In this document: in pieces, positions 46,038 to 63,641 of the stretch
Layout: every line of letters starts with the position of its first letter
How positions within the stretch are numbered: the stretch's first letter is position 1
Virus record (IMG/VR): IMGVR_UViG_3300028384_001500
Location: 172,653-236,652 of that record
Length of the DNA: 64,000 bases
Reading direction: 5' to 3' (one strand)
Notes under the pieces: model-generated
What the model was told of the DNA's origin: nothing
What the model saw: only the letters and a program-made list of their open reading frames with translations
Databases searched by the model: none
Position numbers and translations under genes: made by a program

Positions 46038-47946
46038 AAGTCAATATTTCCTCTGCTGATGCTTCATTATAGCCATATTCTTCAATTAAAGTTTGGATCA
46101 TATCAGTATATTTCTTTTTCTGGTCGTCATCACGCGATTTTGAACGTGTAACAATCCTTGCGATATCTTTTACTGATGAAATTAAATATTGTTCGATTGC
46201 TTCTTTTAAAGGGCCGTATGAACGATAATCAACAGTTTCACCTTTTCTCATTTTAGAAAACATAAATGCAGTTACATCATTTCTAAATCCATCTCTAGCT
46301 GAACCAACAACACCAATCATTTCTTCAATTGTTCTCATGAACTTTTCATCTGGTTCTGACTCTTCTCTTGTGATTTTATTTTTTACTTTTGTTTTAGTTG
46401 TAAAACATTCTGCGTTATCTAAGTATGAATCAAATAGTGATTGTGCTTGCTCTTCATATGCAGTAATAAATGCTTTTGCAATTTCAGTTTCTAGAATTCT
46501 GAGATATTCTTCACGAATAATCTTTTGTAGAATTTCAAGATATCTTGTCTTAGCATCTTCATCAATAATCTGTTCTTTGACTTGCTTAATTAAAGAGTCG
46601 ACAACATTAATCGGTGTAATCATACCATTATCTGAATCTGAAAGTGCTGCATCCAAGGCTTTCATAATAAAGCGTGTAGAAATACCTTCCATACCTTCGT
46701 GCTTTGCCTCATCTTTAAGATCACGAATATCGACTTTCTTTACGCGACCTTTTTCAATAATTGCCTCACCATTGTAAATTTTCATTTTAGTTAGTAAGTC
46801 ACACTTTCTAGACTGTTGTAGGCGGCTCATCACTGAAAACATTGAAGCTATTTTTAAAGTATGCGGTGCGATATGTGCATCTGTAAAGTCAGACCTACGA
46901 ATTATCTTTTCATAAATTTTTTGTTCTTGATCTAATTCTAACACATAAGGTACTTCAATCTTTAATACCCTGTCCAAAATAGCCTCGTTAGTGTGTTCAG
47001 ATTTAAATCTGTTCCACTCTGACTCATTACAATGAGATAATATCACCCCATCAAAATAAAGCATATCGTTCTTACCTGGGGTAGGCACACGTTTCTCTTG
47101 GGTTGCTGTTAACATTGTATGTAAGAATTCAATCTCATTCTTGAAAACTTCTACAAACTCAACAATACCTCGATTACCTACGTTAAATGCTCCATTAAGT
47201 GACAAAACTCTTGGATCGTCTTCTGGATATAGGTCTAATTTACTAATATCTTCTGTACCAATAAGGACTGACACGTCTTGGCTATTAGCATCCATTGGCG
47301 GAACTACAGCAATACCTCTGCGTCCTCTTTGCGAGTAACCGGTTTGCTTTACTGGAAACTTTTCATACTCACCGTTAAATTCATTCATTAATCTATGACG
47401 ACATACCGGACATAAGTCACCTTCAATATGCACACCTAGTAATTCTTCAAAGTCTTTTCTGAGACTCCTAGGTAGAAGGTGAAGTGGTTCTTCTCTTACC
47501 GGGCAGCCATCTAAGTAGTAATAATCTTCTGCTTCTTCCAGTGCACGCTTTACTGAATCGATCAACGCTGATTTTCCTGCTCCAACAGGACCCATTAAGA
47601 GAAGAACCTGCCGACTTTCTTCACCTTTAAAAGCTGCCGACTTCATAAATCTCATCAATTTGTTGATGACAGACTCCATTCCAAAAAATTCTTTTTCAAA
47701 ATAGTCATACTTTCTAATTTTGTCGCCATTAAAAATATCTCGATAACCATCAGTCCCTACATCCAAAGTATCAACACCACGATTTTTAATAGTTTCATAT
47801 AATCGCTTATGTGCTAGCTTAACTGATCCCGGTTTTTCTCTGACTAATTCAAGATAGTCTAAAAAAGTACCTTCAAACTTAACTTTATTTTTTTGTTCTC
47901 TTTGCTTTTTAATCATTGTCAAAAAGTCTTTTTGATTGCGTGCCAT
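46006..47946 (-). CDS. prkA: PrkA/YeaG AAA+ ATPase (serine kinase family)
   Basis: Walker A GPVGAGKS; CPVREEPLHLLP; GDLCPVC; GNRGIVEFVEVFK; HCNESEW; EAILDR; EGMEGISTRF. Confidence 0.92.
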   Translation of the reverse strand: MARNQKDFLTMIKKQREQKNKVKFEGTFLDYLELVREKPGSVKLAHKRLYETIKNRGVDTLDVGTDGYRDIFNGDKIRKYDYFEKEFFGMESVINKLMRFMKSAAFKGEESRQVLLLMGPVGAGKSALIDSVKRALEEAEDYYYLDGCPVREEPLHLLPRSLRKDFEELLGVHIEGDLCPVCRHRLMNEFNGEYEKFPVKQTGYSQRGRRGIAVVPPMDANSQDVSVLIGTEDISKLDLYPEDDPRVLSLNGAFNVGNRGIVEFVEVFKNEIEFLHTMLTATQEKRVPTPGKNDMLYFDGVILSHCNESEWNRFKSEHTNEAILDRVLKIEVPYVLELDQEQKIYEKIIRRSDFTDAHIAPHTLKIASMFSVMSRLQQSRKCDLLTKMKIYNGEAIIEKGRVKKVDIRDLKDEAKHEGMEGISTRFIMKALDAALSDSDNGMITPINVVDSLIKQVKEQIIDEDAKTRYLEILQKIIREEYLRILETEIAKAFITAYEEQAQSLFDSYLDNAECFTTKTKVKNKITREESEPDEKFMRTIEEMIGVVGSARDGFRNDVTAFMFSKMRKGETVDYRSYGPLKEAIEQYLISSVKDIARIVTRSKSRDDDQKKKYTDMIQTLIEEYGYNEASAEEILTYASNNLWRDS

Positions 47947-47971
47947 ATATTGTTACTCCTGCTTCTCTATA

Positions 47972-48000
47972 ATAATATTTTATTATATTTTGTATGTAAA
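47972..48000 (-). promoter_or_regulatory. sigma70-like promoter upstream of prkA
   Basis: TTTACA-17 nt-TATTAT, then AGGAG SD. Confidence 0.45.
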
Positions 48001-48001
48001 A

Positions 48002-49327
48002 TTAAATTTCCCAAACTTCCTCTTCAATTATTGTATAAAGCTTAGCGTCAAAAGGCCAGAGATCTCTGACGTGATCCATTACTTTATCAGCATAGTCTAA
48101 GTCTAGGTCTCGACCGTCATGTTCATGCTTAAGAACTAAAGTGTTTTCACTGTCAACACTATCAACATAAACATGAGGTATCATGTTAATACCTGTGTTT
48201 CTAATAAGTTCATTCCTGACCGTCTTCCAGTCATCGTGATCTGTTACTTCAGATACAATTGCGCTACCGTCTTTTTGATTCTCGTAAGCGAAGAAGTTTA
48301 ATTCTCTAAAGTCTTCTTCATCAAGAAGCATTCTTAGAGCTGAGACATCATCGCTAGTTTCTCTGACTTCAAAGCACCTTTCTAGCCCGTATTCTCTCTC
48401 TAGTTTTTGGAAAATATAAAAACCAACATGATATGGGTTAACTCTTCCTAAATGAGGCCTGACAACTGCATTATGCATCTTTAAAAAAGGAAGATGCATT
48501 TCATCAGGTAATTTTAAATCATGCAATATTTTATAATGCCAAAATGAAGCCCACCCCTCGTTAAGGATTTTTGTTTGAATCTGTGGCATAAAGTACTGAC
48601 TGTCTTCTTTGACGATATCAATTAAGTCTAATTGCCAGTCTTCAAAATAGTCTGGATAGTATTCAGAAAAGAATGCCAACATATCGTGGTCAGGTTGAAG
48701 AAGTCTTTGCTTGTTAAGGACGTCTGAATTAAGAATAATCCCTTTTTCTTTGTATTTGTTGTATTTTTTAATTTCACCTGCTTTGATTTCAGACTTAGAC
48801 TTTCTTGGTGAGTTATATCTATTTGTTTGATATTTAATTGCATGTAAGTTATCTAAAAAAGTTTCTACTTTTTCTTGACCAATCAAAGGATCTTCAACAT
48901 ATCCTTGAATTCTTTTTTTAGCATTTCTCATTCTAGAAACTACATGACTCGGGTCAGTATTCTTAAAACATCTGTTGTTTTTAAAGAAGTCACTGTGTCC
49001 AACACAATGTGCCATAATTAATATCTGTAAGTATAACGGGTTTTGCATCATCAGATATGCTATTGAAGGATTGGAATTAATAATCATTTCATAAGGCAAA
49101 CCTGTCTGACCTAAATTATAATTAAAATGTGTCTGCTCAAATGATTTACCAAATGACCAATGGTTGTAGTGGCTAGGCATTCCATGATAAGACATGTGAC
49201 CAATCATCTCGTAATAGTCACATATCTCATAAGTTATTTCGTGCCAGTCTAATCCATAACCTTTAGCTATTTCGCATATTTTATCATCCCATTCTTTGAG
49301 ATCACTTACACCCCAATCAGAGCTCAT
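48002..49327 (-). CDS. spoVR: SpoVR/YcgB family protein
   Basis: GMPSHYNHWSFGKSFE; LPYEMIINSNPSIAYL; AHCVGHSDFFKNN; TKILNEGWASFWH; NPYHVG; start placed at MSSDW with GGAGG SD. Confidence 0.92.
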   Translation of the reverse strand: MSSDWGVSDLKEWDDKICEIAKGYGLDWHEITYEICDYYEMIGHMSYHGMPSHYNHWSFGKSFEQTHFNYNLGQTGLPYEMIINSNPSIAYLMMQNPLYLQILIMAHCVGHSDFFKNNRCFKNTDPSHVVSRMRNAKKRIQGYVEDPLIGQEKVETFLDNLHAIKYQTNRYNSPRKSKSEIKAGEIKKYNKYKEKGIILNSDVLNKQRLLQPDHDMLAFFSEYYPDYFEDWQLDLIDIVKEDSQYFMPQIQTKILNEGWASFWHYKILHDLKLPDEMHLPFLKMHNAVVRPHLGRVNPYHVGFYIFQKLEREYGLERCFEVRETSDDVSALRMLLDEEDFRELNFFAYENQKDGSAIVSEVTDHDDWKTVRNELIRNTGINMIPHVYVDSVDSENTLVLKHEHDGRDLDLDYADKVMDHVRDLWPFDAKLYTIIEEEVWEI

Positions 49328-50489
49328 ATTTTCCTCCAAAAAGTTTGGCAAATTGCGGCCAGACATCTTCTTTTTCTCTAATTCTACATACTTTAAAACT
49401 ATCACTAGTTAGAACTTCAAAAACTTTTGCCATTTCTTCTCCCCAAATGCTTTCTTGTTCAGGTTTAATTTGAATATAACCGGCAAGTTGACTAATATCT
49501 GAAAGATAAGACATTTTTTCCAATGCCTTGTCATTATCTTCAGACCAGTTATCACCATCTGAGCAGTGGAACGTATAGATATTCCAAGCTGAAGGACTAT
49601 ATCTTTCATCAATAATATCTTCTGCCATTGCTAAACCGGAAGAAATATAAGTTCCTCCACTGCTGGCTTTCTTAAAGAAATCGTCTTCATTTACTTCTTG
49701 AGCTTCAGTTGTATGTGAAATAAAAACAATATCAACAGTTTGATATTTATATCTAATAAATTGATAAAGCAAAAAGAAGAAAGATCTAGCCAAAAACTTT
49801 TTACGTTTACCCATCGATCCTGAAACATCCATTATCATAAAAATCACAGCATTAGTGATAGGTTTCTTTTTCACCTCAATATGTTTATATTTTAAATCAT
49901 CATAATGAAATGGAAACCTTTCACCACTTTCTGGGTCATATGTTCCGTTTTTTATCGCTTGTTTTTGTCTTCTTATTTTGTTTTTAAGAGTTTCCTTTTT
50001 AGACAGTCTTGCACGTATACCTTTCGGTCTATATCCCTTTCTTTTAATTTTTTCAGCCATTACAGTTGATGACTGTTTTTTATCTAGATCAGGAAGATTT
50101 AAATCGTCAAAAAGATACTTTGCCAATTCATCTAATGATATCTCTACATCATAAAAGTCTTCACCTTTATTATTTCCCGGTTTACCTTCTCCGGATCGAC
50201 CTTGACCTTTTTGTTTGGCTTGTCTTACAACTTGGCCCTTCTGAATATCTTGTCCTTGAGCAGAGCCTACTCCTTTAGAACCACTTCCTTTACCATGAAT
50301 AAATTGGTATTCTTTTATACCTCTTACAGGTATTTTAATCTTTTTCTTTCCATCTTGACCAATAATAGACTCTTCAGCAACTATATCATGAATTCCTTCT
50401 TTAATTGCTTTTTCAATCTTTTCTTTATGGCGTCTTCGATCAGAAGCTGATCGATCAGCAACTGTTTTATGATTTTTAAAAATTGACAT
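49317..50489 (-). CDS. yeaH: YeaH/YhbH (DUF444) VWA-domain protein
   Basis: DRRRH; FPFHYDDLKYK; MIDAS-like MDVSGSM; FISHTTEA; SGGTYISS; WNIYTFHCSDGDNW. Confidence 0.9.
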   Translation of the reverse strand: MSIFKNHKTVADRSASDRRRHKEKIEKAIKEGIHDIVAEESIIGQDGKKKIKIPVRGIKEYQFIHGKGSGSKGVGSAQGQDIQKGQVVRQAKQKGQGRSGEGKPGNNKGEDFYDVEISLDELAKYLFDDLNLPDLDKKQSSTVMAEKIKRKGYRPKGIRARLSKKETLKNKIRRQKQAIKNGTYDPESGERFPFHYDDLKYKHIEVKKKPITNAVIFMIMDVSGSMGKRKKFLARSFFFLLYQFIRYKYQTVDIVFISHTTEAQEVNEDDFFKKASSGGTYISSGLAMAEDIIDERYSPSAWNIYTFHCSDGDNWSEDNDKALEKMSYLSDISQLAGYIQIKPEQESIWGEEMAKVFEVLTSDSFKVCRIREKEDVWPQFAKLFGGKYEL

Positions 50490-53128: not shown

Positions 53129-53215
53129 AATAACTCCTTGATTGTATAGATATATTATATACTGTTATTTTATACGTTGCATTTTTGCATAATACTTAAA
53201 ATTATAAGGGTTTGT

Positions 53216-54004
53216 ATGTATGTAGATTATTTTATTAAACATTGGAGAGAAATTATGTGGGGATCTATTCTATCTTTATTTGGCTTGTTTTATTTATTTA
53301 GTTGTCAAGGTCACCCAAAAATAATTACGCCAAAGTTTAATAATAAATTTCAACATCAACTCTCTAACTTTGTGTTCTTAGTCAAAGAAGTCAAATTAAC
53401 TTTTTGTGATGAGATTGACAAAGAAATGGGAACATGTGACGAAGTCCAGTTTCCTGAAGCTTCTGCAAGTGGAGTTGTAATATCTCAGTCAAGTTCTCAT
53501 ATTTTTATTCTTACTGCAAATCATTTTTGTGTTGACGCTCCTCCCGAAGAAGACATGTCTCTTGTAGGTGAAAGAAAAATTAAAGTATTTATTGGTGACA
53601 CAGAAAGAGAGTCTCAAGTTCTCTATGAGGATGAAGAAAACGATCTATGTCTTTTAGGTTCTATTAAGCTCGAAAAAGAAAACTTTAAGACTGTAAAGTT
53701 CGCAAAAAGGATGCCTAAAATAGGAGAGAAGGTCTATAATTTTGCCGCTCCTAACGGTATAGGCTCACCTAATACAAGACTCGTGTTCGACGGATACTTT
53801 GCGGGTTGTGAACAAAAACTCTGCATGTACAGCATACCTGCAACTTTTGGAAGCAGTGGATCAGCTGTTTATAATGAAAAAGGAGAGTTAGTTTCAATTT
53901 TAGTTGCAGCAGCAATAGATTTTGAAAATGTATCAATGGGCCCGGATATACAAAAAATATCTGAATTAATAATATCTATCGATGATGTAATAGATATTTA
54001 CTAA
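53216..54004 (+). CDS. Trypsin-like (S1) serine protease, membrane-anchored or lipoprotein
   Basis: Triad motifs LTANHFC, NDLCLL, GSSGSAVYN; N-terminal hydrophobic helix ending LFSC. Confidence 0.85.
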   Translation: MYVDYFIKHWREIMWGSILSLFGLFYLFSCQGHPKIITPKFNNKFQHQLSNFVFLVKEVKLTFCDEIDKEMGTCDEVQFPEASASGVVISQSSSHIFILTANHFCVDAPPEEDMSLVGERKIKVFIGDTERESQVLYEDEENDLCLLGSIKLEKENFKTVKFAKRMPKIGEKVYNFAAPNGIGSPNTRLVFDGYFAGCEQKLCMYSIPATFGSSGSAVYNEKGELVSILVAAAIDFENVSMGPDIQKISELIISIDDVIDIY

Positions 54005-55138: not shown

Positions 55139-56923
55139 TTAGTTGTACCTACCAGCAGGAAAATTTAAAACAATTTCAAATTTTCTTGTTTTGGACCTAA
55201 TTTTACTTCTAATTCTTGACGGCTCAATCTTTTCGTTGTCTGCGCTTCCGGCTTTTTCTAAATACCTTCTAACAACGTTTCTAAGATTTTCAAATTGCTT
55301 TGCAACTGGAGATCTTCTTTGACCAGGCGCTAATCTTACGTTTTTAACAACACCTTGACGATCTGTCACTATAGTTAAGTTAATTGTCCCACCAGAAATA
55401 TTTCCTTTAACCCTTTGAGAGACAGCATTTACTAAACCATTAGTAGTTCCTTCTTTAAAACCTATACTTTCTAAAGAAGATTTTCCTTGGCCTGCTAATA
55501 TTACTCTAACTGTAGGCTTAAGTCCAAAACCAGTATCAGTTAGCTCACTTCCTGAAATTGTTTCATTACCTGGTATTCTTTTTCGGCTGCGGCCTCCTGA
55601 ACCTCCACCTGATTTAATTTTTTTATTACCTGATCCATAATCAGTGTTTCCATTATAAGCATCAACAACAAACGCTAAACAACCGATTGATCTAGGTACA
55701 TATCCAGGAAAAGCTCCTATCATGTCACCTGAAACTTCCGTCCATGGATAAAAACCACTTTGATAAGTTTTTGAATATTCAAGTGTTTTAAAGACTGAAT
55801 GATATGTAAAAGAGTGGTTAAGCACTTTCCCCCAAAGATCGTCAGTTTGTGGGCCCCATTTACCATCAACTGTGATTTTCATTCCTAAGTTTCTTTCTTC
55901 TGAGTACTTGTTCATAACAAATTGTATTTTTTGAACGGTTGTTCCTTTTAAATCATTAGGATTGATAGGTACAATCTGAGTTGTAGGATCATCAGGTTCT
56001 GGTGGGTTGTTAATTAACTCGTTAACTTGATTTGAAAATTCAATCAATTCTTTTTCACTATAACAAGCTTTTTGTCCATTTCCGTCTTTGAAGCAAATAA
56101 CTGCCTTTCTTTTAAGATCTTGAATAGGCTTTCGGACATAGTCTTCCATATCGTTAGTAAAAGCTAAAGATTCTTCATCACTAAGTTCCTCATTAAAAAC
56201 TTTAACCAAGTCTTTTTTGTATTGCTGCTTAAAAGCTGATGCTGTTAACGACAAATCCATGAGTGAAGGCATTTCTCTAATAACAGTCTCAATTTCACCC
56301 TCATCAGTTCCCATTCCAAAAAAACCACCCTTGGTAGCTCTCCAGAGACGTTTGGCCATTTTAGTATGTAAGTCTAAGACATCATTGTAGTGTGTTAAAG
56401 AAGGAAAGTTTGCCAATTGATCTTGCATGCCGGCTTCTTTCATTTTAGCTTTTGTTTCTGTTTCAATTTTTTTAAGTTCAGCGTTTGTTTTTTCAGCCCA
56501 AGTTCCGTTAAGAATACCCTCAATGTCACTTCCCACGTCACCTTCATCTAATAAAATGTATGCAATTCCAAGTCCTATAGCAACGCCAGCACCAATAACC
56601 CAACCCGGAGGACCCCCCGATATAGCAGCTGCTGCACCGGATGCAGCACCACCGCCAGAAAGATAACCAGCTGCAATAGCAGCAGTAGTTGAATTAGCCA
56701 CACCACCTGCTGTTGCAAGCTGTGCTGCTGCGCCTAAAGTTAAGTTTGTAGCACCTAGCGCACCTAACCCACCTGTTACTCCGTATGTGGTAGCTGCCCC
56801 AGCGATACCTGCTGTTGCAAGATCACCAGCTATTTCTCCCCCACCTTGCTTGTATTTTTCTGCTTTTTCTGCAAGTATGCGCTTTCTAATTATTTTTCTT
56901 AATTCTACCTCTGATAATCTCAT
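55139..56923 (-). CDS. Multidomain protein: leader, Gly/Ala hydrophobic region, annexin-like repeat, peptidoglycan-binding-like domain
   Basis: AKRLWRATKG..GMGTDEGEI...FKQQYKKDL...EELS (annexin); VQKIQ...VDGKWGPQT (PG-binding). Confidence 0.65.
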   Translation of the reverse strand: MRLSEVELRKIIRKRILAEKAEKYKQGGGEIAGDLATAGIAGAATTYGVTGGLGALGATNLTLGAAAQLATAGGVANSTTAAIAAGYLSGGGAASGAAAAISGGPPGWVIGAGVAIGLGIAYILLDEGDVGSDIEGILNGTWAEKTNAELKKIETETKAKMKEAGMQDQLANFPSLTHYNDVLDLHTKMAKRLWRATKGGFFGMGTDEGEIETVIREMPSLMDLSLTASAFKQQYKKDLVKVFNEELSDEESLAFTNDMEDYVRKPIQDLKRKAVICFKDGNGQKACYSEKELIEFSNQVNELINNPPEPDDPTTQIVPINPNDLKGTTVQKIQFVMNKYSEERNLGMKITVDGKWGPQTDDLWGKVLNHSFTYHSVFKTLEYSKTYQSGFYPWTEVSGDMIGAFPGYVPRSIGCLAFVVDAYNGNTDYGSGNKKIKSGGGSGGRSRKRIPGNETISGSELTDTGFGLKPTVRVILAGQGKSSLESIGFKEGTTNGLVNAVSQRVKGNISGGTINLTIVTDRQGVVKNVRLAPGQRRSPVAKQFENLRNVVRRYLEKAGSADNEKIEPSRIRSKIRSKTRKFEIVLNFPAGRYN

Positions 56924-56924
56924 T

Positions 56925-57728
56925 TTATTCTTGTCCTTTTCCTAAAATTTGATTTGCCAAATCTTTTCCGCTACCGGCTCTTCTTGCATCGTCTCTATTT
57001 GATAATCCTTTGTTAGCAGCGTCTAAGCCGCCCTCAACACCAATTGCACCTAAAGTACCTACAGCACCCATCTTAGCAAAATCGCCTAGTTCATCTGCTA
57101 AACCACCTTTATATACGCCGTTGTATAAGAAGTCTTTTAAACTATCATATTCACAAAATATAGCCTCAATCTTAGGTTCAATAATCGGCCCAATCCATTG
57201 GTAAATAAACTGATTAACAACCTCTCTACCCGCTGCATTTATTAATCCGCCAAGCGCCTTATCTAATCTATCTAATAACTCAGGTGATTTAATTTTTTCT
57301 TGACCGGTAACTGTATAATAAATAACTTTGATCAGTTCAGCACCTTGAAGTTCTGTAATTGTTTCAATACCTGCACGAGCAACTAATGCTGGTATTTCTT
57401 TGCATTTCCCTTCCTCAAAATATTTACCCATACCTAAAATATTAAATTCTTCAATAAAATTCATTAAGAATCTAAAAACTACGCTTTGTTTATCAACACC
57501 CATAAGATCAGCAAGGTATTCAATCACTTGAGACTTAAATGCACTAACTAAACCACCGCCAAAAATATCCATAATATTTTCCTCAATAACACGAGGCTGA
57601 TATCCGGATAATTTGTAGTTGATTTGATCGATTCTTTCCATAATCAAATGATTGGTTTTTAATTCATTTAACATTACTTTGCTTTCAATAGACTCTTGCA
57701 CAAGCCTTCTTATTTGATATTTGTTCAT
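56925..57728 (-). CDS. Hypothetical protein with the shared leader and a C-terminal glycine-zipper-like segment
   Basis: Start placed at MNKYQIRRLVQE with GGAG SD; GAVGTLGAIGVEGG. Confidence 0.55.
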   Translation of the reverse strand: MNKYQIRRLVQESIESKVMLNELKTNHLIMERIDQINYKLSGYQPRVIEENIMDIFGGGLVSAFKSQVIEYLADLMGVDKQSVVFRFLMNFIEEFNILGMGKYFEEGKCKEIPALVARAGIETITELQGAELIKVIYYTVTGQEKIKSPELLDRLDKALGGLINAAGREVVNQFIYQWIGPIIEPKIEAIFCEYDSLKDFLYNGVYKGGLADELGDFAKMGAVGTLGAIGVEGGLDAANKGLSNRDDARRAGSGKDLANQILGKGQE

Positions 57729-57786: not shown

Positions 57787-58110
57787 TTATATTTCAATCA
57801 CATAAGAATATTTAACACCTGGATTGAATAATTGCTTCTGATACGGTCTGGCTTTGAAATCTTTAAGTATGTTGAAGTCTTTATCTAAAAATATAATATG
57901 AAGAGGAATTCCAGTATTTTTCATTGTAAAAGAATGATTTACGGGTGTATTATAAACAAACAACATACCGTGATTTTTTGGAAGTTCTTTTATTTTTGAC
58001 AGGCCTATTCTTTTTTTATTGGGAGTGTCAGCTATGGCTAGTGTGTAAGTCCTTCCCATAATTTTTGTTTTAATTCTCTTATAACCTTTAAAAAGTTGGT
58101 AAAAATGCAA
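57787..58110 (-). CDS. DUF192-family protein
   Basis: IADTPNKKRIGLS...GMLFVY...FTMKNTGIPLHIIFLD...YVIEI; start uncertain (TTG 58110 or a downstream ATG). Confidence 0.8.
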   Translation of the reverse strand: MHFYQLFKGYKRIKTKIMGRTYTLAIADTPNKKRIGLSKIKELPKNHGMLFVYNTPVNHSFTMKNTGIPLHIIFLDKDFNILKDFKARPYQKQLFNPGVKYSYVIEI

Positions 58111-58157: not shown

Positions 58158-58616
58158 ATGTTTATGTTTGCAATATTTTTAACAATTCAAAATGCAAATG
58201 CTGACAAAGAGACGCTAGTAAAAGCATATGAATGGGAAAAAAAACCAGCAATACAAATTTGCGGTGATTCAAATGTAACAATTAAAGAAGTAAATAATGC
58301 CCTTTCTTATTGGCAAGATGAGCTAAATAATAAAAACTTGGTAAAAAGTGTATCTTACAAAGAAACATGCTCATTTAATAGATCAAATGTTATTTTATTT
58401 ACTAACGAATACAATAGAAGATTTGAAAAAGAACTGGCAAATACAAACTTAGACTGGTATTATTATGAAGGTGAAAGCCAAAAATATCTGAACACAGCAA
58501 AAGTAGCAATCCCTAATAATATATCATATAAGCGACAATTAACAATTACACATGAGTTAGGTCACGCCTTGGGTTATCACCACTCGAATCACGAAGTAAT
58601 GAAAAGCCATTTTTAA
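58158..58616 (+). CDS. Metzincin/matrixin-like zinc metalloprotease, probably secreted
   Basis: HELGHALGYHH (HExxHxxGxxH) with a Met-turn (EVM); signal-peptide-like N-terminus; AGGAG SD. Confidence 0.8.
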   Translation: MFMFAIFLTIQNANADKETLVKAYEWEKKPAIQICGDSNVTIKEVNNALSYWQDELNNKNLVKSVSYKETCSFNRSNVILFTNEYNRRFEKELANTNLDWYYYEGESQKYLNTAKVAIPNNISYKRQLTITHELGHALGYHHSNHEVMKSHF

Positions 58617-58620
58617 ACAA

Positions 58621-58644
58621 ATAAAAACTCCGGCCTGACCGGAG
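58621..58644 (-). terminator. Intrinsic terminator (minus strand)
   Basis: Stem ctccgg/ccggag with a 5-nt loop, followed by TTTTTAT on the minus strand. Confidence 0.65.
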
Positions 58645-58710
58645 CGAGCTGCCCAACTCTATGAGCGAAGAGCAGTACCCCGAGGGGGTCCTACTTTCTC
58701 TCCACCCTGC

Positions 58711-59169
58711 TTACTCAAGAAAATCATCTGGATATCGATTTGGGTTCCGATTTCTAGAATACCGATCAAGATTATAATCATCCGAACCCAAATAAGAGTC
58801 AGTCTTACTCCGAGCTAGATCATATGCTTTATCATCTAATGCACGTAGATCATGCAAAGAGTCAGGGTGAAGTGCACGATACCCGCCCGGGAAAAAAGGA
58901 TCAACCGGCTCATAGAGTGCAGCAGCCTCATTACCTAACCTTTCCATGTCACCAACTTCCATATACGCTATGTAGTTATCGACATAATCATCTGGACCGC
59001 CCAATGCGTCGACAAGAGAGTGGGCTTGTTCTACTGACCCCCTATCGATCAACGAGTTAATCTTTGCTACGTGACTATTAGGAATATGCGCAGGTAATGT
59101 CGGCTTAATCCGATGTTCAGATAAAACTTCCATGATTAGGTCTCGTAAACGTCTTCTATTTAATTTCAT
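58711..59169 (-). CDS. Single-unit paralog of the tandem-repeat protein, with the shared leader
   Basis: MKLNRRRLRDLIMEVLSEHRIKP...LVDALGGP...VGDMERLGN; start placed by GGAG SD. Confidence 0.75.
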   Translation of the reverse strand: MKLNRRRLRDLIMEVLSEHRIKPTLPAHIPNSHVAKINSLIDRGSVEQAHSLVDALGGPDDYVDNYIAYMEVGDMERLGNEAAALYEPVDPFFPGGYRALHPDSLHDLRALDDKAYDLARSKTDSYLGSDDYNLDRYSRNRNPNRYPDDFLE

Positions 59170-59191
59170 ATTATTTTCTCCAATTGCCTGC

Positions 59192-59578
59192 TTAAATAAA
59201 GTCATCATCATCATCGTCGAAATCATCGACAATAGTCGACACCGGATAAGTGTTCATATTACCAGGATAATATTCTCTAAATCGGCCTCGTCCTCCGCCT
59301 ATCTCATCATCGAAGTATTGGATCTGTGCGCCGATTGTATCTGTGTCACCGCTCTCTAAGCTGTGCACGTGAGTAAAACCCATACCTTTGAGTGCTACAA
59401 GAGCACCGGCAACTTCATCCATTTCGTCGACGACGATTTCTCCACCTGCTAGTTCAGGATGGCGCAGGGTGAATCCGGCACCTAGTGATAACTCTACAAC
59501 CTTCATAGTATTGTCTTGTAGCATTGTTAGCTCATTAAGGATCATGCGTCGCAACGCTCTTCTGTTTAAGCTTTTCAT
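59192..59578 (-). CDS. Acidic hypothetical protein with the shared leader
   Basis: MKSLNRRALRRMILNEL; poly-Asp C-terminus; AGGAGG SD; ATGA overlap. Confidence 0.7.
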   Translation of the reverse strand: MKSLNRRALRRMILNELTMLQDNTMKVVELSLGAGFTLRHPELAGGEIVVDEMDEVAGALVALKGMGFTHVHSLESGDTDTIGAQIQYFDDEIGGGRGRFREYYPGNMNTYPVSTIVDDFDDDDDDFI

Positions 59579-61680
59579 AAAGTAGGCCCTCCTGCGGCTT
59601 CTATCATTTCTTCCAGTTCATAAGCACGAGACTGCAATTCTTCTTTATCATCGTAGTAATCGGGATACTCCATTTCATACCCATAAGCAGCCTCGATGGG
59701 ATCAACACCGAATCGCTCTTGAGTCATGAGGTAGTCCTGTCTTTCCATTTCCATTTCTTCGAGTTGTGCCTCGATACGCTGCAATTCTTGCATCATTGCG
59801 TCGATCGACATGGGAGGCTGTCCGCCTATACCCATGCTTGACATCTCTTGCAAGATCATGCGTCGTAATCCGGCTCTGTTGGAGTTATGTTCATTTAGCG
59901 GTTTAACACTTCCCATGCCTCGCATGTATCTGTCACGCATGTATGGGTAACTTGCATGTGTACGCGCACCCGGTTTTGTAGTGCCATCGAACCCAGGGGC
60001 TAGTCCGCGTGAGACTTTGTCTGCCCCTAACCTGTAAGCCTGGTTGTCTAAGTCTTCAAGTTGTCTGTAGTCATCAGATTCGTACCATTCTGGATCTGAG
60101 TAATCAGCATTGGCAAGTATATCAGCTCGAGCATTACCTAGCTTTTCTAAGTCACCCACTTCTTCGTAGGCTCGATAATTTTCGACCCAATTTGGATCGC
60201 CACCAAAAGCGTCGATGAATGTCTGTGCCTGATCAAAATCGCCGGTATTAATTAAGTCATGGATCTTATCGATGTGCGACTGCGGCAAACCTAGTAGATC
60301 AAGCGGTGGAGGCGCAATACGATGTTCATTTAGTGGGTTGCCGTCGTCATCGAAATAGGTAGGCGACTTGTCTCCTCTATGGTCAACAAAAGTATGAGGC
60401 AAAGTGTTATTTCTAATGTTGAAGTATCTGTCACGCATATAGTCACGATCCCAAGTGGTGTCAGCTGGAAGTTCCCCTCTTTCTATTTTGCTATTGACAC
60501 TGTCATAAGCATGCTTATCGATATCGTAGACAGGCTGCATATCACTCATTGTTGACCAACCTCTTTCTGTTTTAGGTACTCTGGACATAACGTCAGCTGC
60601 CCGGTTACCCAGCTTTTCTAAGTCTCCGACTTCATCATACATTTGATAATCTCTTGCATAGTTAGGAGGACCACCAAAAGCGTCGATGAGTGACTGTGCC
60701 ATTTCTAATTCTCCATCACTGATGAGATCATGGATCTTGTCGACGTGATCCTGTGGTACACCCGGTAGATTAAGTGAGGGCGCAATGCGATGCTCAGATA
60801 GCGGCCTGTCTCTGTTACCTACATATCGTCGCATATCAGACTGAAAGCTACCACTACCACCAAAAATAGAATGAGCATCTCCGTCTATCATTTGCCCTCT
60901 TTTGTGAGCTATACCAACAGCTTCCCTATCTATGTTTTTGAGTGCATTTGTCAATTCTAAACTGTCGCGATCATATGTCGATCTAGCATCGTAGGCTTGA
61001 TTGCCCAATTTCTCCATGTCACCTACATTACTATAAAGAATATAGTCGTCAACGTAGTCAACAGGCCCGCCAAGAGCATCGATGAGCGACCGTGCCATCT
61101 CTATTTCACCTCCGTCGATGAGGTCTTGTATTTTGTGCAAATGGTGAAGAGGAATATTTGTGGGAACAGGAGGCGCAGTGAGATGCTCAAATAAGAATTC
61201 ATCCGGATCCGATTCATCATCGATATATCTATCTCTGTTACCTCTATAGCGATCCAGAGCTATGTCTTGGGCATCTGGGTTATAATACTCTTGACCGTCC
61301 TCAATTTCTACGGCTTTGTCCTGTGATAGCGAGTAAGCCTCCCTGTCTACATCACGTACTTTTTTCCAGTCATCAGTTTTCATAAAGTCACGCGCAGCGA
61401 ATTCTTCTGGAGAGTCAGGGAGGATGTCTGCAGCTCGATTACCTAGCTTCTCCATATCACCTACATTTTGGTACTCTAGATAATCCTGCGCATAAGTAGG
61501 AGAGCCACCCAAAGCATCAACCAGCGATTGGGCTTGGGATAAGTCACCGTGATCGATGATGCCATGTATAGTATCCAAGTGCTGAGGTGGTATTGCACCT
61601 GCGTCTGGCATTGTCCGGTGTTCTCTTAAAGCCATTCGCTCCAAGATCATTCGTCGTATTTTCTGTCGTGAGATTTTCAT
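59575..61680 (-). CDS. Tandem-repeat polyprotein-like protein (four units of about 131-156 aa plus an acidic tail)
   Basis: Four copies of LxEH..P...I..LID.G...AQ.L.DA.GG...VGD(M/L)EKLGN; start placed at MKISRQ by GGAG SD. Confidence 0.8.
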   Translation of the reverse strand: MKISRQKIRRMILERMALREHRTMPDAGAIPPQHLDTIHGIIDHGDLSQAQSLVDALGGSPTYAQDYLEYQNVGDMEKLGNRAADILPDSPEEFAARDFMKTDDWKKVRDVDREAYSLSQDKAVEIEDGQEYYNPDAQDIALDRYRGNRDRYIDDESDPDEFLFEHLTAPPVPTNIPLHHLHKIQDLIDGGEIEMARSLIDALGGPVDYVDDYILYSNVGDMEKLGNQAYDARSTYDRDSLELTNALKNIDREAVGIAHKRGQMIDGDAHSIFGGSGSFQSDMRRYVGNRDRPLSEHRIAPSLNLPGVPQDHVDKIHDLISDGELEMAQSLIDAFGGPPNYARDYQMYDEVGDLEKLGNRAADVMSRVPKTERGWSTMSDMQPVYDIDKHAYDSVNSKIERGELPADTTWDRDYMRDRYFNIRNNTLPHTFVDHRGDKSPTYFDDDGNPLNEHRIAPPPLDLLGLPQSHIDKIHDLINTGDFDQAQTFIDAFGGDPNWVENYRAYEEVGDLEKLGNARADILANADYSDPEWYESDDYRQLEDLDNQAYRLGADKVSRGLAPGFDGTTKPGARTHASYPYMRDRYMRGMGSVKPLNEHNSNRAGLRRMILQEMSSMGIGGQPPMSIDAMMQELQRIEAQLEEMEMERQDYLMTQERFGVDPIEAAYGYEMEYPDYYDDKEELQSRAYELEEMIEAAGGPTL

Positions 61681-61703
61681 TTCTGCTCCGTGATGCATCG
61701 TAT

Positions 61704-61712
61704 TATAACTAT
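61704..61712 (-). promoter_or_regulatory. ATANTTATA putative late-promoter motif
   Basis: ATAGTTATA about 24 nt upstream of the ATG at 61680. Confidence 0.45.
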
Positions 61713-61749
61713 TTACACTGTATTTATTTTTCTTATTAAATATTAAAAA

Positions 61750-62385
61750 CTAGTCACGAGTTATAAAAAGTTTATTGCCCATTGCCATAATAGTCGTGTT
61801 ACTCTTAGAATAGCGTTTACTCAGGGGAGACATTGCCCAGTAAATACCGTCGTAGCCTATCATGTTCTTAGGAATACGCTGAGACATGTTATCCCAGTCG
61901 TCAGGAGTCAAGGTGTTCTTTGTGTCATCACACTGAAAAACATCGATGTCTCCGGCGCCTGACTGGCTATACTGGGATCGATTTCTAAGATAGAAGTCCC
62001 AGACGTCTTGAGCATCTTTGCTGACCATGCGACGATCAGCGACCAGCCCTGACCCCTTCATCGAGGCGACTTCCATCGCGATATCATAGATAAGCGGGCC
62101 GTAACCGTTTGCCGCCATGGCCTGATACACCTCCCAAGCGCCGCCGCACGTGTCGTCTTTTAAGGGCACTATCGCAATATATCCGTATATGCCCTCAGGA
62201 GACGGACTGTGGTCTTCAGCGTAGAATCTACCCATAGACCCGTCGGCGTTGATTCCGCAATATGTCACACAAACGTCGCCCTTAGGGAAGAAATTGACAT
62301 TTACACCGATTGTCGGAGGTAACTCTCCGTGTGCGATCATGGCTTCAGAGATTATTTGATTTAGCTGCCTTCTTGTAATTCTCAT
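61750..62385 (-). CDS. GNAT-like protein with the shared leader
   Basis: WEV...NGYGPLIYDIAME...VSKDAQDVWDFY resembles GNAT motif A/B spacing. Confidence 0.5.
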   Translation of the reverse strand: MRITRRQLNQIISEAMIAHGELPPTIGVNVNFFPKGDVCVTYCGINADGSMGRFYAEDHSPSPEGIYGYIAIVPLKDDTCGGAWEVYQAMAANGYGPLIYDIAMEVASMKGSGLVADRRMVSKDAQDVWDFYLRNRSQYSQSGAGDIDVFQCDDTKNTLTPDDWDNMSQRIPKNMIGYDGIYWAMSPLSKRYSKSNTTIMAMGNKLFITRD

Positions 62386-62391
62386 AGTGAT

Positions 62392-62400
62392 TATAACTAT
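62392..62400 (-). promoter_or_regulatory. ATANTTATA putative late-promoter motif
   Basis: ATAGTTATA only 6 nt upstream of the ATG at 62385; no SD visible. Confidence 0.45.
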
Positions 62401-62402
62401 CT

Positions 62403-62430
62403 AAAAGTTCTCCAAAATTCAGGAGAAATT
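62403..62430. repeat. Degenerate third copy of the intergenic palindromic repeat
   Basis: aaaagttctccaaaattcaggagaaatt versus aaaagttttccaaattttccggagaaatt. Confidence 0.6.
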
Positions 62431-62710
62431 AACGTCGTCTTACCCATATGTTATCATCACAGCGACTAGTTCGCAAATGCCAACAACCGCAGTCATCCGA
62501 CCAGTACGCTGTATGCTGACGATCGTACTTCAAGAACTGATATCTTGAGTAAAGATCAGCAACTTCCTCGTAAGGAAAACGAATTTTCTTGCACCCGCTG
62601 TAGAAACAGTTACACTTACTGAACTCACCGCGGAAATGATATTTTCCGTTTTTAATAATTATTGACCAAGTTCTCCGCCCATCCCTGACAGACTTACATA
62701 CACGTTCCAT
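62429..62710 (-). CDS. Small Cys/Trp-rich hypothetical protein
   Basis: GAGGAG SD before MERVCK; several Cys residues. Confidence 0.55.
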   Translation of the reverse strand: MERVCKSVRDGRRTWSIIIKNGKYHFRGEFSKCNCFYSGCKKIRFPYEEVADLYSRYQFLKYDRQHTAYWSDDCGCWHLRTSRCDDNIWVRRR

Positions 62711-62920
62711 TGAACACACTCCTCTATGATAATCGTTTTTTTACGATATCACTTACGATGTGTCCCGAAACTTCACGTCCACCCATTAGCCTCTCTTCCA
62801 GAAGGACCTGCGCTTTCCCGTTCGGATCTAAGCTTTACCTCTATGTTGCTGTCTAGACACCGTCGATCTTTTAGGTTGGCCATTCTGGACTATGGCAATC
62901 TCTAGTACCCATACATTTAT

Positions 62921-62949
62921 ATTATATGCTGTTTCACACACGGTTACAA
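62921..62949 (-). promoter_or_regulatory. Near-consensus sigma70 promoter
   Basis: TTGTAA-17 nt-TATAAT directly downstream of a terminator and the palindromic repeat. Confidence 0.55.
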
Positions 62950-62959
62950 AAGTTTTGCA

Positions 62960-62984
62960 AAATTTTCCGGAGAAATTTTTGTGA
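62960..62984. repeat. 25-bp quasi-palindromic direct repeat, copy 1
   Basis: aaattttccggagaaatttttgtga, identical to 63642-63666. Confidence 0.9.
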
Positions 62985-62985
62985 G

Positions 62986-63013
62986 AAAAAGAAACGCCGG
63001 TGATGAGCCGGCG
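62986..63013 (-). terminator. Intrinsic terminator (minus strand)
   Basis: Stem cgccgg/ccggcg with a 7-nt loop, followed by TTTCTTTTT on the minus strand, just after the stop at 63034. Confidence 0.7.
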
Positions 63014-63033
63014 CGAGTTTTTACTTTTATCTA

Positions 63034-63591
63034 TTAACCCCAACCATCAATTCTCATATGCGGGTAATTTTCAACAATATACATCATTGCCATACGGCCC
63101 CAGTCATTTTCATCTTGAATATTTAAAAGCAAATTAATTGGGCCGTCTTTCCAACTATTAAATGGGCCAGGTCCTCGATTCTGGACCACGTAATCATAAT
63201 TACAATAATTAAGCAACGTCTGCTGCCTATCAATATCGATCGGATTTGTAGGTCCCATAGTGTCAGGAAAATCATCAGGTTTCATACCCGCAATACCGTA
63301 AGTTAACTCTAGTTCTGCCAAGATTCTCTCAAACTCCTGAATAGCTCGATCAATCGCTCTTTTAACACTAGCTTCAGAAGTTCCACCGTATATCGTCTTC
63401 AAAACATTATCACTAGCTTCGTCAAGATATATTTTTAAAATGGCTTCGCCTTTTCCGCCGGCTCGATCTTCTCCCATGCCAAAAAATCCACCTGGCGGCG
63501 ATATCACATTGTCTTTATCATCATCGTTAAAAATAGTGTCTCTAAACTCTTTTAAAACCATCTGTCGTAACTGTGTTCTAGTCAATTTCAT
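63034..63591 (-). CDS. Hypothetical protein with the shared leader
   Basis: MKLTRTQLRQMVLKEF; AAGGAG SD; TATAAT at 63607-63612. Confidence 0.7.
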   Translation of the reverse strand: MKLTRTQLRQMVLKEFRDTIFNDDDKDNVISPPGGFFGMGEDRAGGKGEAILKIYLDEASDNVLKTIYGGTSEASVKRAIDRAIQEFERILAELELTYGIAGMKPDDFPDTMGPTNPIDIDRQQTLLNYCNYDYVVQNRGPGPFNSWKDGPINLLLNIQDENDWGRMAMMYIVENYPHMRIDGWG

Positions 63592-63641
63592 AGCTTCTCC
63601 TTTATGATTATAATATACAATTTATATAGGAAAAGTTTTCC

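What the first reader, a model, noticed from the sequence alone, without database searches (positions are those of the whole stretch)
58711..61680. Tandem polyprotein punctuated by L-x-E-H sites, with a free-standing monomer gene
Seen: LREH (61618-61629), LFEH (61183-61194), LSEH (60790-60801), LNEH (60322-60333) and LNEH (59887-59898) divide the ORF into units of 145, 131, 156 and 145 aa. Each has I..LID.G...A..L.DA.GG and VGD(M/L)EKLGN. The tail after the last site starts with a second leader whose DNA (59853-59880) nearly matches the start of the next gene (59541-59567). ORF 58711..59169 is one unit with leader and LSEH. Inference: gene duplication and fusion produced a precursor that the prohead protease cuts after Glu into a family of diverged small acidic proteins, all imported with one leader; possibly a diversified anti-defence or sponge array.
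Basis: partly seen in the sequence, partly recalled or inferred. Interest (0 to 1): 0.8.

Follow-up and report, generated by a model that had tools for sequence, protein, structure and literature searches.

The report
Phage head-cargo polyprotein with cleavable leader
A marine jumbo T4-like phage encodes four diverged copies of a small acidic protein as one precursor, and each copy is bounded by the motif that T4-type head proteases cut, so this looks like a new way to load several internal head proteins with one targeting leader; cleavage itself has not been shown.

Summary
ORF 59575..61698(-), probably starting at ATG 61680, carries L-x-E-H at exactly the stated coordinates (5 found, 0.13 expected). 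These sites bound four units that are 38-44% identical to each other and to the monomer gene 58711..59169.

The window is the last 64 kb of a 236.6-kb marine phage contig. About 79 kb away, the same contig has a T4-type head module. It includes a gp21-family prohead protease (Peptidase_S77, 2e-27). Its major capsid protein has L-R-E|A aligned with T4 gp23's Glu65|Ala66 cleavage site.

The 15-20-residue leader heads seven consecutive genes here and an 811-aa gene next to the capsid gene. It always ends in [LIV]-x-E.

Across the family (66 clusters among 1.84 billion proteins), about 75 unit starts follow [LIMF]-x-E. [LI]xE is about 5-fold depleted inside units and 2.4-4.5-fold enriched in this phage's scaffold-like proteins. 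A near-identical strain lacks exactly unit 4 (435 nt) and the monomer gene.

Best reading: capsid-targeted cargo is cut apart by the prohead protease. This is inferred, not demonstrated. The His is clade-specific. The unit's fold matches nothing known, and an anti-defence role is untested.

The parts
59575..61680 (-). Polyprotein gene, 701 aa from ATG 61680 (the ORF is open back to 61698): leader, four units, internal leader, tail
   Evidence: Homologues P0002 and P0003 start at MKISRQ/MRISRQ.
61721..61730 (-). AAAATAAATA box 41-50 nt upstream of the start. It resembles a T4-type late promoter. The same 10-mer lies 28-37 nt upstream of the capsid gene.
   Evidence: It is the only copy in the 64-kb window and the only copy in the 20.8-kb L009. 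Weak and post hoc.
61621..61680 (-). Leader 1, MKISRQKIRRMILERMALRE (20 aa), with ILE and LRE sites. Predicted capsid-targeting propeptide.
   Evidence: leader HMM E=2e-5. In the monomer model the leader is a helix followed by a flexible stretch.
61186..61620 (-). Unit 1, 145 aa, pI 4.2, ends FLFE
60793..61185 (-). Unit 2, 131 aa, pI 5.1, ends PLSE
60325..60792 (-). Unit 3, 156 aa, pI 4.7, ends PLNE. Its body is replaced by a diverged, 13-codon-shorter version in a near-identical strain.
59890..60324 (-). Unit 4, 145 aa, pI 4.7, ends PLNE. Precisely absent (435 nt) in a near-identical strain.
   Evidence: Joint 59886->60322 in runs X1 and X2. AF2 model pLDDT 80, all-helical, C-terminal site region disordered.
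59845..59889 (-). Internal second leader, HNSNRAGLRRMILQE, ending in LQE. A relic of gene fusion.
   Evidence: leader HMM hit
59578..59844 (-). Tail module, 89 aa, acidic. Helical by eye only (Glu/Gln/Met-rich, coiled-coil-like; not modelled). It has two further LEE sites. Present in P0003; replaced by another module in P0002.
58711..59169 (-). Free-standing monomer gene: an 18-aa leader ending LSE, then one unit that ends ...DDFLE-stop. Absent in the X1/X2 strain.
   Evidence: AF2 pLDDT 86.
59192..59578 (-). Leader-bearing gene, 128 aa. Its homologue is fused behind the units in P0002.
   Evidence: BLASTP 64% identity, E=4e-38.
61750..62385 (-). Leader-bearing gene, 211 aa (MRITRRQLNQIISE...). 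Homologues in L002 and L015.
63034..63591 (-). Leader-bearing gene, 185 aa (MKLTRTQLRQMVLKE...)
56925..57728 (-). Gene with a weaker leader, 267 aa (MNKYQIRRLVQE...)
   Evidence: Not significant by leader HMM.
55139..56923 (-). Gene with a leader-like start, 594 aa, basic (MRLSEVELRKIIRKRILAE...), followed by a Gly/Ala-rich hydrophobic stretch. Syntenic homologue in L003.

Best explanation
The gene encodes a precursor of internal head (cargo) proteins of a T4-like jumbo phage.

Shown:
- The architecture is a 20-aa amphipathic leader, four paralogous acidic helical units of 131-156 aa, a second leader and a tail module, with [L]-x-E at every junction.
- The same contig encodes a T4 gp21-family prohead protease.
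- This phage's capsid protein carries L-R-E|A at the position where T4 gp23 is cut.

Inferred:
- The leader works like the T4 capsid targeting sequence and docks the precursor onto the scaffolding core during prohead assembly.
- Once the shell closes, the prohead protease cuts after Glu of each [LI]-x-E. This removes the leaders and frees four separate proteins of roughly 15-18 kDa.
- The units lack internal sites, so they survive and are too large to leave the shell. They would stay with the DNA and be ejected into the host.
- One leader thereby loads four diverged paralogues in equal amounts.

The array grew and shrinks by recombination at unit boundaries and at leaders.

What the units do in the host is unknown. 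An arms-race (counter-defence) role fits their diversification and copy-number flux but is speculation.
For: 1. The same contig (JGI Ga0307030_1000001 = IMGVR_UViG_3300028384_001500) carries a T4-type head module in T4 order: Terminase_6N, Portal_T4 (1e-73), Peptidase_S77 (2e-27) and Gp23 (1e-77). The protease keeps the columns of T4 His85 and Ser140 (A4).
2. In the capsid protein alignment E65/A66 is invariant. T4 has LTE|A, this phage LRE|A and Mel-JY01 ISE|A (A3). T4 removes 65 residues, and gp21 cuts after L/I-x-E (PMC9958956; PMC9026906).
3. The leader heads seven consecutive genes in the window. It also heads an 811-aa gene next to the capsid gene, a 69-aa gene beside the protease and a 239-aa gene in L007. 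It always ends in [LIV]-x-E.
4. In about 50 marine loci, unit genes sit in islands of up to 9 leader genes.
5. A leader-bearing protein (L003) aligns from residue 15, just after I-R-E, to residue 2 of a leaderless homologue (L002).
6. About 75 unit starts in 66 clusters have P1 = Glu in all but one, P3 = L/I/M/F and a variable P1'.
7. Some monomer genes stop right at the junction (...DFLE-stop: window monomer, P0026, P0029); others end one or two residues away or in an acidic tail.
8. [LI]xE inside units: 14 observed against 66 expected, with 0 of 2000 shuffles as low. Control triplets are not depleted, and half of the residual sites have Pro at P1'. In this polyprotein it is 0 against 3.7.
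9. In the same genome the scaffold-like 487-aa protein has 24 sites against 8.8 expected, the 280-aa protein 11 against 4.6 and the 183-aa protein 6 against 1.3.
10. The junctions lie in low-confidence, non-helical segments of the models.
11. Copy number varies from 1 to 4 across clusters. A contig in runs X1 and X2 that is 99.7% identical nearby lacks exactly unit 4 and lacks the monomer gene.
Against: - There is no protein-level evidence. No virion proteome, N-terminus or expression data exist. The RNA-library run X14 only shows presence.
- Within the 10-kb flanks, no other family-bearing contig reached a head module. Linkage to an S77 protease is therefore shown for this genome only.
- The leader has no sequence similarity to the T4 targeting sequence.
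- P1' His, and P3 Phe or Met in some clades, are not documented for gp21.
- The shuffle tests treat related sequences as independent, so their P-values are overstated.
- The cluster lies about 79 kb from the head genes.
- The units are acidic, unlike the basic proteins related to the T4 IPs that the review describes.
Confidence: 0.65

Rival explanations
1. The protein is an uncleaved tandem-repeat protein. It stays intact as a four-domain, beads-on-a-string virion or intracellular protein. E-H-R-I-x-P would then be a conserved N-terminal cap of each repeat, and the 'leader' an ordinary N-terminal helix.
For: Cleavage has not been observed. The residues after the Glu (x-R-x-x-P) are also conserved, as expected for a structural motif. 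Unit-exact deletions and monomer genes fit any tandem-domain protein equally well.
Against: This reading does not explain four things:
- Glu at P1 and a hydrophobic residue at P3 are near-invariant while P1' varies.
- [LI]xE alone is about 5-fold depleted inside units and enriched in scaffold-like proteins of the same genome.
- Unrelated neighbouring proteins carry the same leader ending in the same motif.
- A leaderless homologue begins exactly after that motif.
Confidence: 0.15
2. The precursor is cleaved, but by another protease and for another destination. Candidates are the neighbouring trypsin-like protease (53177..54004, +) or the metzincin-like protein (58158..58616, +). Both are conserved next to the cluster in a relative, and the leader would be an export or sorting signal.
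For: Trypsin_2 scores 2e-13 and there are weak zincin hits with an HExxHxxGxxH motif. Both genes are syntenic in L003. Some S1-family enzymes are Glu-specific (general knowledge).
Against: Both proteases begin with hydrophobic signal-like or lipoprotein-like N-termini (read by eye, not predicted by a tool), so they are probably exported. The leader is highly charged and amphipathic, not a signal peptide. The cargo proteins have no export signal. The capsid protein and the scaffold-like proteins share the same motif logic.
Confidence: 0.07
3. The units are prohead-core or scaffold accessory proteins, comparable to T4 gp67 and gp68. They would help build or size the large capsid and would then be discarded rather than delivered to the host.
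For: The units are acidic and helical and carry a core-type leader. T4 core proteins are small and are processed by gp21. The tail module does carry extra LEE sites, as a disposable segment would.
Against: Units avoid internal sites and so would remain as 15-18 kDa proteins. This contrasts with the site-rich scaffold-like proteins. Unit number differs between near-identical strains (3 against 5 per genome). The family is rare, with 66 clusters and none among deposited phages. That is unexpected for an assembly-essential part.
Confidence: 0.12

Closest known systems
T4 internal proteins IPI, IPII, IPIII and Alt, with their capsid targeting sequence (CTS), processed by prohead protease gp21
   Same: A short N-terminal propeptide is shared by otherwise unrelated proteins and ends in L/I-x-E. 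A gp21-family protease is encoded in the genome. The cargo genes are variable and non-core (PMC9026906, PMC3012670).
   Different: The leader is unrelated in sequence and longer (15-23 aa, against the 10-aa MKTYQEFIAE). The cargo is a new acidic family. One precursor carries four cargo copies separated by internal sites, whereas T4 IPs are single-unit genes. Packaging and cleavage are unproven here.
T4 scaffold and core proteins gp22, gp67 and gp68, which gp21 cuts at many L/I-x-E sites
   Same: One polypeptide carries multiple sites for the same protease. This phage's 487-aa scaffold-like protein is likewise rich in sites.
   Different: In those proteins the sites are dense and the products are small peptides that leave the head. 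Here the sites occur only at the boundaries of folded units, and the units otherwise avoid the motif.
Inner-body and ejection-protein paralogue families of phiKZ-like giant phages (phiKZ, 201phi2-1, SPN3US)
   Same: Paralogous head-internal proteins whose number varies between phages. They have N-terminal propeptides removed after Glu by a gp21-related protease (PMC5694885).
   Different: Those paralogues are separate genes with long propeptides (over 100 aa) and an S/A/G-x-E motif. Pfam finds no PF12699 or any other domain here.
Polyvalent proteins of phages and conjugative elements (Iyer et al. 2017, PMC5512222)
   Same: The concept is shared: several effector modules in one polypeptide, delivered with the DNA and released by proteolysis.
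   Different: Polyvalent proteins combine different enzymatic domains and usually carry an embedded metallopeptidase. Here the modules are homologous copies with no recognisable domain, and cleavage would be in trans by the head protease.

Membership tests
T4-type CTS-bearing internal head proteins | The genome encodes a gp21-family (Peptidase_S77) prohead protease | tested here: met
   L009:10845-11447, PF03420 E=2e-27. 33-49% identical to annotated prohead proteases. T4 H85 and S140 columns conserved.
T4-type CTS-bearing internal head proteins | A short N-terminal propeptide shared by otherwise unrelated proteins of the same phage | tested here: met
   Seven consecutive window genes and at least three more on the contig. 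Islands of up to 9 such genes in other marine contigs.
T4-type CTS-bearing internal head proteins | The propeptide ends in the protease motif L/I-x-E | tested here: met
   All window leaders end in [LIV]-x-E. About 75 family junctions have P1 Glu and P3 L/I/M/F.
T4-type CTS-bearing internal head proteins | The protein is found inside the capsid, with its propeptide removed | not testable with these tools
   The phage is uncultured and no proteome is available.
T4-type CTS-bearing internal head proteins | Sequence homology to the T4 CTS or IP proteins | tested here: not met
   No Pfam, PHROG or NCBIfam hit. No tblastn hit to 50,697 phage records, T4 relatives included. The leader sequence is unlike MKTYQEFIAE.
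phiKZ-like inner body protein family (PF12699) | Match to the family profile | tested here: not met
   No Pfam hit at E<=0.1.
Polyvalent proteins (Iyer 2017) | Several different effector domains plus an embedded processing peptidase | tested here: not met
   The units are homologous to each other. No domain of any library matched.
Tandem-repeat polyprotein (operational) | Homologous units in one ORF, with the same junction motif as the leader-unit junction of single-unit genes | tested here: met
   A1, A2, junction table.

The most novel reading that the evidence does not exclude
This is the first recognised case in a tailed phage of a head-cargo polyprotein: a tandem array of diversifying paralogues that the prohead protease releases inside the capsid. 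It would be one instance of a previously undescribed, widespread capsid-targeting leader system in marine phages (MK[LI]T[KR]xxL[KR]x[IL]IxE...[LIM]xE) that marks whole islands of injectable proteins. The acidic units would be a rapidly evolving counter-defence payload, such as DNA mimics or decoys, whose dose and variety are tuned by gain and loss of units.
Probability: 0.25. Interest if true: 0.85.

Novelty: new variant of a known kind. Interest (0 to 1): 0.62.

Why it matters
If the reading holds, it extends the T4 model of a targeting propeptide plus a Glu-specific head protease in two directions.

First, it adds a polyprotein strategy. One leader would deliver several cargo proteins in fixed ratio. 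I found no description of this for tailed phages in the literature searched.

Second, it points to a new leader shared by dozens of unrelated proteins in uncultured marine phages. That would give a simple sequence tag for predicting which 'hypothetical' genes encode injected proteins. It would list candidates for host-takeover or counter-defence functions in the ocean virome.

The protease-site bookkeeping (sites avoided in cargo, concentrated in scaffold) could also be reused as a computational test on other phages.

Tried and rejected
- DNA and protein searches of the polyprotein and of a divergent monomer against deposited phages found nothing. A 31-aa leader query also found nothing credible.
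- Pfam, PHROGs and NCBIfam gave no family for the units or the other leader proteins. The only hit was a sub-threshold PHROG of unknown function.
- A PDB profile search and three Foldseek searches of two confident models gave no hit with E below 1. The ESM Atlas gave nothing usable.
- The contig shows no terminal repeat, so I could not reach genes beyond the window's end.
- Look-ups of two family members returned only contigs of 1-1.7 kb.
- The HVA1-like domain fused to some units led to pelagiphage HTVC008M, but its neighbourhood has no leader genes.
- 185,579 bacterial and archaeal genomes hold no relative, so there is no host clue.
- No metagenome locus reached a head module within its 10-kb flanks, so co-occurrence with S77 could not be tested beyond this genome.
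- My first regular expression for the leader was too strict and missed genes. I replaced it with an HMM.
- A ParB-like reading of one leader protein (DGNHR motif) got no Pfam support.
- Literature searches for the leader strings returned only unrelated influenza papers.
Full report
**1. Observation**

ORF 59575..61698 on the minus strand is 707 aa. The pattern L.EH occurs five times, at residues 24, 169, 300, 456 and 601. From the protein's own composition 0.13 occurrences are expected.

The four segments between the sites are 145, 131, 156 and 145 aa. They are 38-44% identical to each other and to the mature part of the neighbouring ORF 58711..59169.

The likely start is ATG 61680 (MKISRQ...). 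It has a GGAG upstream, and the two closest homologues start at the same residue. That gives a 701-aa product.

The segment after the last site begins with a second copy of the leader (HNSNRAGLRRMILQE). Its DNA resembles the start of the next gene only moderately: about 77% over 26 nt by eye, with a 14-nt near-identical core.

**2. What genome this is**

The window is the last 64 kb of IMGVR_UViG_3300028384_001500, also filed as JGI Ga0307030_1000001, a contig of 236,652 bp. It has no detectable terminal repeat.

The window holds the following genes:
- a gp25-like baseplate protein and very large tail or fibre-like proteins
- glycosyltransferases
- PhoH
- a PrkA/YeaH/SpoVR-like trio

DNA and protein searches find no deposited phage with this gene. 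Public runs holding the region are marine metagenomes.

I walked along the contig by exact-protein look-ups and reached a T4-type head module about 79 kb from the polyprotein, on the same strand:
- large terminase (Terminase_6N, 3.5e-16)
- portal (Portal_T4, 1.3e-73)
- a 280-aa protein
- a 200-aa Peptidase_S77 protein (2.1e-27)
- four small proteins
- an acidic 487-aa scaffold-like protein
- a Gp23 major capsid protein (9.8e-78)
- an 811-aa protein

The protease is 49% identical to the annotated prohead protease of Microcystis phage Mel-JY01. It is 33-45% identical to gp21 of cyanophages and T-even phages. It keeps the columns of T4 His85 and Ser140 (A4).

In an alignment of capsid-protein N-termini, Glu65 and Ala66 of T4 gp23 are invariant. 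T4 reads LTE|A, this phage LRE|A and Mel-JY01 ISE|A (A3). T4 gp21 removes the 65-residue propeptide of gp23 and cuts after L/I-x-E (PMC9958956; PMC9026906).

**3. The leader**

Seven consecutive minus-strand genes between 55139 and 63591 begin with variants of M-K/R-(L/I)-x-R-(R/Q)-x-L-R-x-x-I-x-E. Each leader ends in [LIV]-x-E.

A leader HMM built from the family finds the leader only at N-termini, with one exception: the internal copy in the polyprotein. It also picks up a 69-aa gene beside the protease and a 239-aa gene in L007. The 811-aa gene immediately after the capsid gene starts MLLTRRIFRKLIFEALLLE.

In about 50 marine metagenome loci, unit genes lie in same-strand islands of two to nine leader genes with unrelated bodies.

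The leader is a separable module. A 124-aa leader protein of L003 aligns from residue 15, the residue after I-R-E, to residue 2 of a leaderless homologue in L002 (51% identity).

In the AlphaFold model of the monomer (pLDDT 86), the leader is a helix at residues 5-18. It is followed by a low-confidence, non-helical stretch and then the helical domain.

This is the behaviour described for the T4 capsid targeting sequence: a 10-20-residue propeptide shared by diverse internal proteins and removed by gp21 (PMC9026906; PMC3012670). The sequences are unrelated, however.

**4. The family and its junctions**

An exhaustive profile search of 1.84 billion representative proteins finds 66 clusters. Almost all are single units that start at residue 16-26, behind a leader. 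A few have two units, and the window protein, with four, is the largest. No bacterial or archaeal genome carries the family.

For about 75 unit starts I read off the preceding residues:
- P1 is Glu in all but one.
- P3 is L, I, M or F.
- P2 is free.
- P1' is H in this clade but V, T, Y, I or A elsewhere.
- P2' is mostly Arg.
- P5' is Pro.

The leader-unit junction and the unit-unit junction are therefore the same. Several monomer genes place their stop codon right at it (...DFLE-stop: the window monomer, P0026 and P0029). Others end one or two residues away or in an acidic tail.

**5. Site bookkeeping**

Inside the four units of the window protein there is no [LI]xE at all, against 3.7 expected (P=0.017).

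Over 54 unit bodies from the family there are 14, against 66 expected, and none of 2000 shuffles is as low. Five control triplets are not depleted: [LI]xD, [LI]xQ, [VA]xE, [LI]xxE and [LI]E. Half of the residual sites have Pro at P1'.

In the same genome the opposite holds for proteins that a T4-type maturation would destroy:

| Protein | [LI]xE observed | Expected |
|---|---|---|
| Scaffold-like, 487 aa | 24 | 8.8 |
| 280-aa protein between portal and protease | 11 | 4.6 |
| 183-aa protein after the protease | 6 | 1.3 |

The shuffles ignore relatedness among family members, so the exact P-values are too small. The direction and the contrast with the controls are clear all the same. This is the pattern expected if a [LI]xE-specific protease sees these proteins and the units are meant to survive it.

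**6. Gain, loss and fusion**

- P0002 is 80% identical. It has three units, and its tail is the homologue, leader included, of the window's separate gene 59192..59578 (64% identity, E=4e-38).
- P0003 has two units and the window's tail. P0004 to P0007 have two units and another tail.
- The syntenic contig L003 has two single-unit genes. One of them ends in a decayed leader.
- Laying public contigs on 58600-62400 shows a strain in two 2025 marine runs with 5 differences in 1,627 nt over 60774-62400. Beyond that stretch it differs in three ways:
  - It skips 59886->60322. That is 435 nt, exactly unit 4, with 12 nt of identity at the joint.
  - The body of unit 3 is replaced by a diverged copy that is 13 codons shorter.
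  - The monomer gene is missing (58627->59211 replaced by 99 nt).
- Another run joins unit 2 to a unit-4-like copy.

Unit number per genome thus differs (5 against 3) between near-identical strains, always in frame and at unit boundaries.

**7. Structure and function of a unit**

Models of unit 4 (pLDDT 80) and of the monomer (pLDDT 86) are all-helical. The variable acidic middle and the C-terminal site region have low confidence.

Foldseek against the PDB and BFVD, a PDB profile search and the ESM Atlas gave nothing significant. The units have pI 4.2-5.1. Function therefore cannot be assigned by homology.

**8. Most likely mechanism**

I read the gene as a head-cargo polyprotein.

Shown: the architecture, the protease gene, the conserved capsid-protein site, the shared separable leader, the site statistics and the copy-number flux.

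Inferred by analogy with T4:
- The leader docks the precursor to the scaffolding core.
- The activated protease cuts at every junction.
- The leaders, and probably the site-containing tail, are cleared.
- The four units stay in the head and enter the host with the DNA.

A 10-mer, AAAATAAATA, resembles the T4 late-promoter core. It occurs once in the window, 41-50 nt before the polyprotein start. It occurs once in L009, 28-37 nt before the capsid gene. This hints at co-expression but is post hoc.

**9. Rivals**

- An uncleaved repeat protein is not excluded. It would leave unexplained the Glu/hydrophobic junction rule, the selective depletion of [LI]xE, and the leader shared with unrelated proteins.
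- The neighbouring trypsin-like and metzincin-like genes are syntenic in L003. Both start with signal-like or lipoprotein-like hydrophobic N-termini and are probably exported.
- A scaffold-accessory role fits the acidity but not the site avoidance, the rarity or the strain-level copy variation.

**10. Comparison and novelty**

The system works like T4 internal proteins with their targeting sequence, and like the paralogous, protease-processed inner proteins of phiKZ-like phages (PMC5694885). It is not a sequence member of either. It also lacks the mixed enzymatic domains and embedded peptidase of 'polyvalent proteins' (PMC5512222).

My literature searches found no description of this leader or of a tandem-unit head polyprotein in a tailed phage. 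I rate it a new variant of a known kind.

The anti-defence idea remains speculation.

Noticed in passing
window 58158-58616 (+), 53177-54004 (+), 57787-58110 (-): Beside the leader cluster sit a small metzincin-like protein (HELGHALGYHH motif, signal-like start), a trypsin-like protease with a lipoprotein-like start (…LFSC) and a DUF192 protein. All three are conserved in the same arrangement in L003. The two proteases look like exported phage proteases of unknown role.
   Followed up: partly
window 44805-50489 (-): A PrkA-like serine kinase (33% identical to those of Thermus phages), a YeaH-like protein and a SpoVR-like protein form a three-gene block in this phage.
   Followed up: partly
window 58700-63600, compared with the rest: Third-codon-position GC of the leader-cluster genes is 0.33-0.54, against 0.20-0.25 for other genes of the phage. 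The capsid gene is 0.29. This could reflect recent acquisition or different codon usage. It is unexplained.
   Followed up: partly
window 61721-61730 (-) and L009 14865-14874 (+): The 10-mer AAAATAAATA occurs once in the 64-kb window, before the polyprotein gene. It occurs once in the 20.8-kb L009, before the capsid gene. It resembles the T4 late-promoter core.
   Followed up: partly
window 58627-59211, in runs X1 and X2: A near-identical strain lacks the free-standing monomer gene. 583 nt are replaced by 99 nt.
   Followed up: partly
L003 2768-3316: A single-unit gene ends with a second, orphan leader (…KLTRNQIRKIIIQEIRAIGRY-stop). This looks like the remnant of a lost downstream fusion partner.
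   Followed up: no
L053 (14.2 kb), L041, L059, L061: These are islands of 6-9 consecutive same-strand genes that all begin MKLTKETLKRIIKEE… or MKITRRQLRRLI… and have unrelated bodies. The leader system is much wider than the unit family.
   Followed up: partly
L003 2360-2734, L028 2718-3089, L002 9553-9885: A small protein with a DGNHR motif (ParB-like by eye, no Pfam support) occurs with the leader in two contigs and without it in a third. The leaderless form starts exactly after the predicted cut.
   Followed up: yes
P0030, P0060; L004 54-347; L005 195-554: Some units are fused to a Lys/Cys-rich C-terminal domain. This domain is also found in Pelagibacter, Roseobacter, Methylophilales and Flavobacterium phages, where some records annotate it as 'HVA1 family'.
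   Followed up: partly
window 55139-56923 (-): The 594-aa leader-like protein is basic (pI 9.0) and has a long Gly/Ala-rich hydrophobic stretch just after the leader. It could be a membrane-active ejection protein. No tool confirmed this.
   Followed up: no
L009 11448-11999 and L010 12625-13089: A small protein directly after the prohead protease has a conserved start (…IVKECLLEILAE… / …IVQEVVREVIAE…) in this phage and in Microcystis phage Mel-JY01. It may be a core protein.
   Followed up: no
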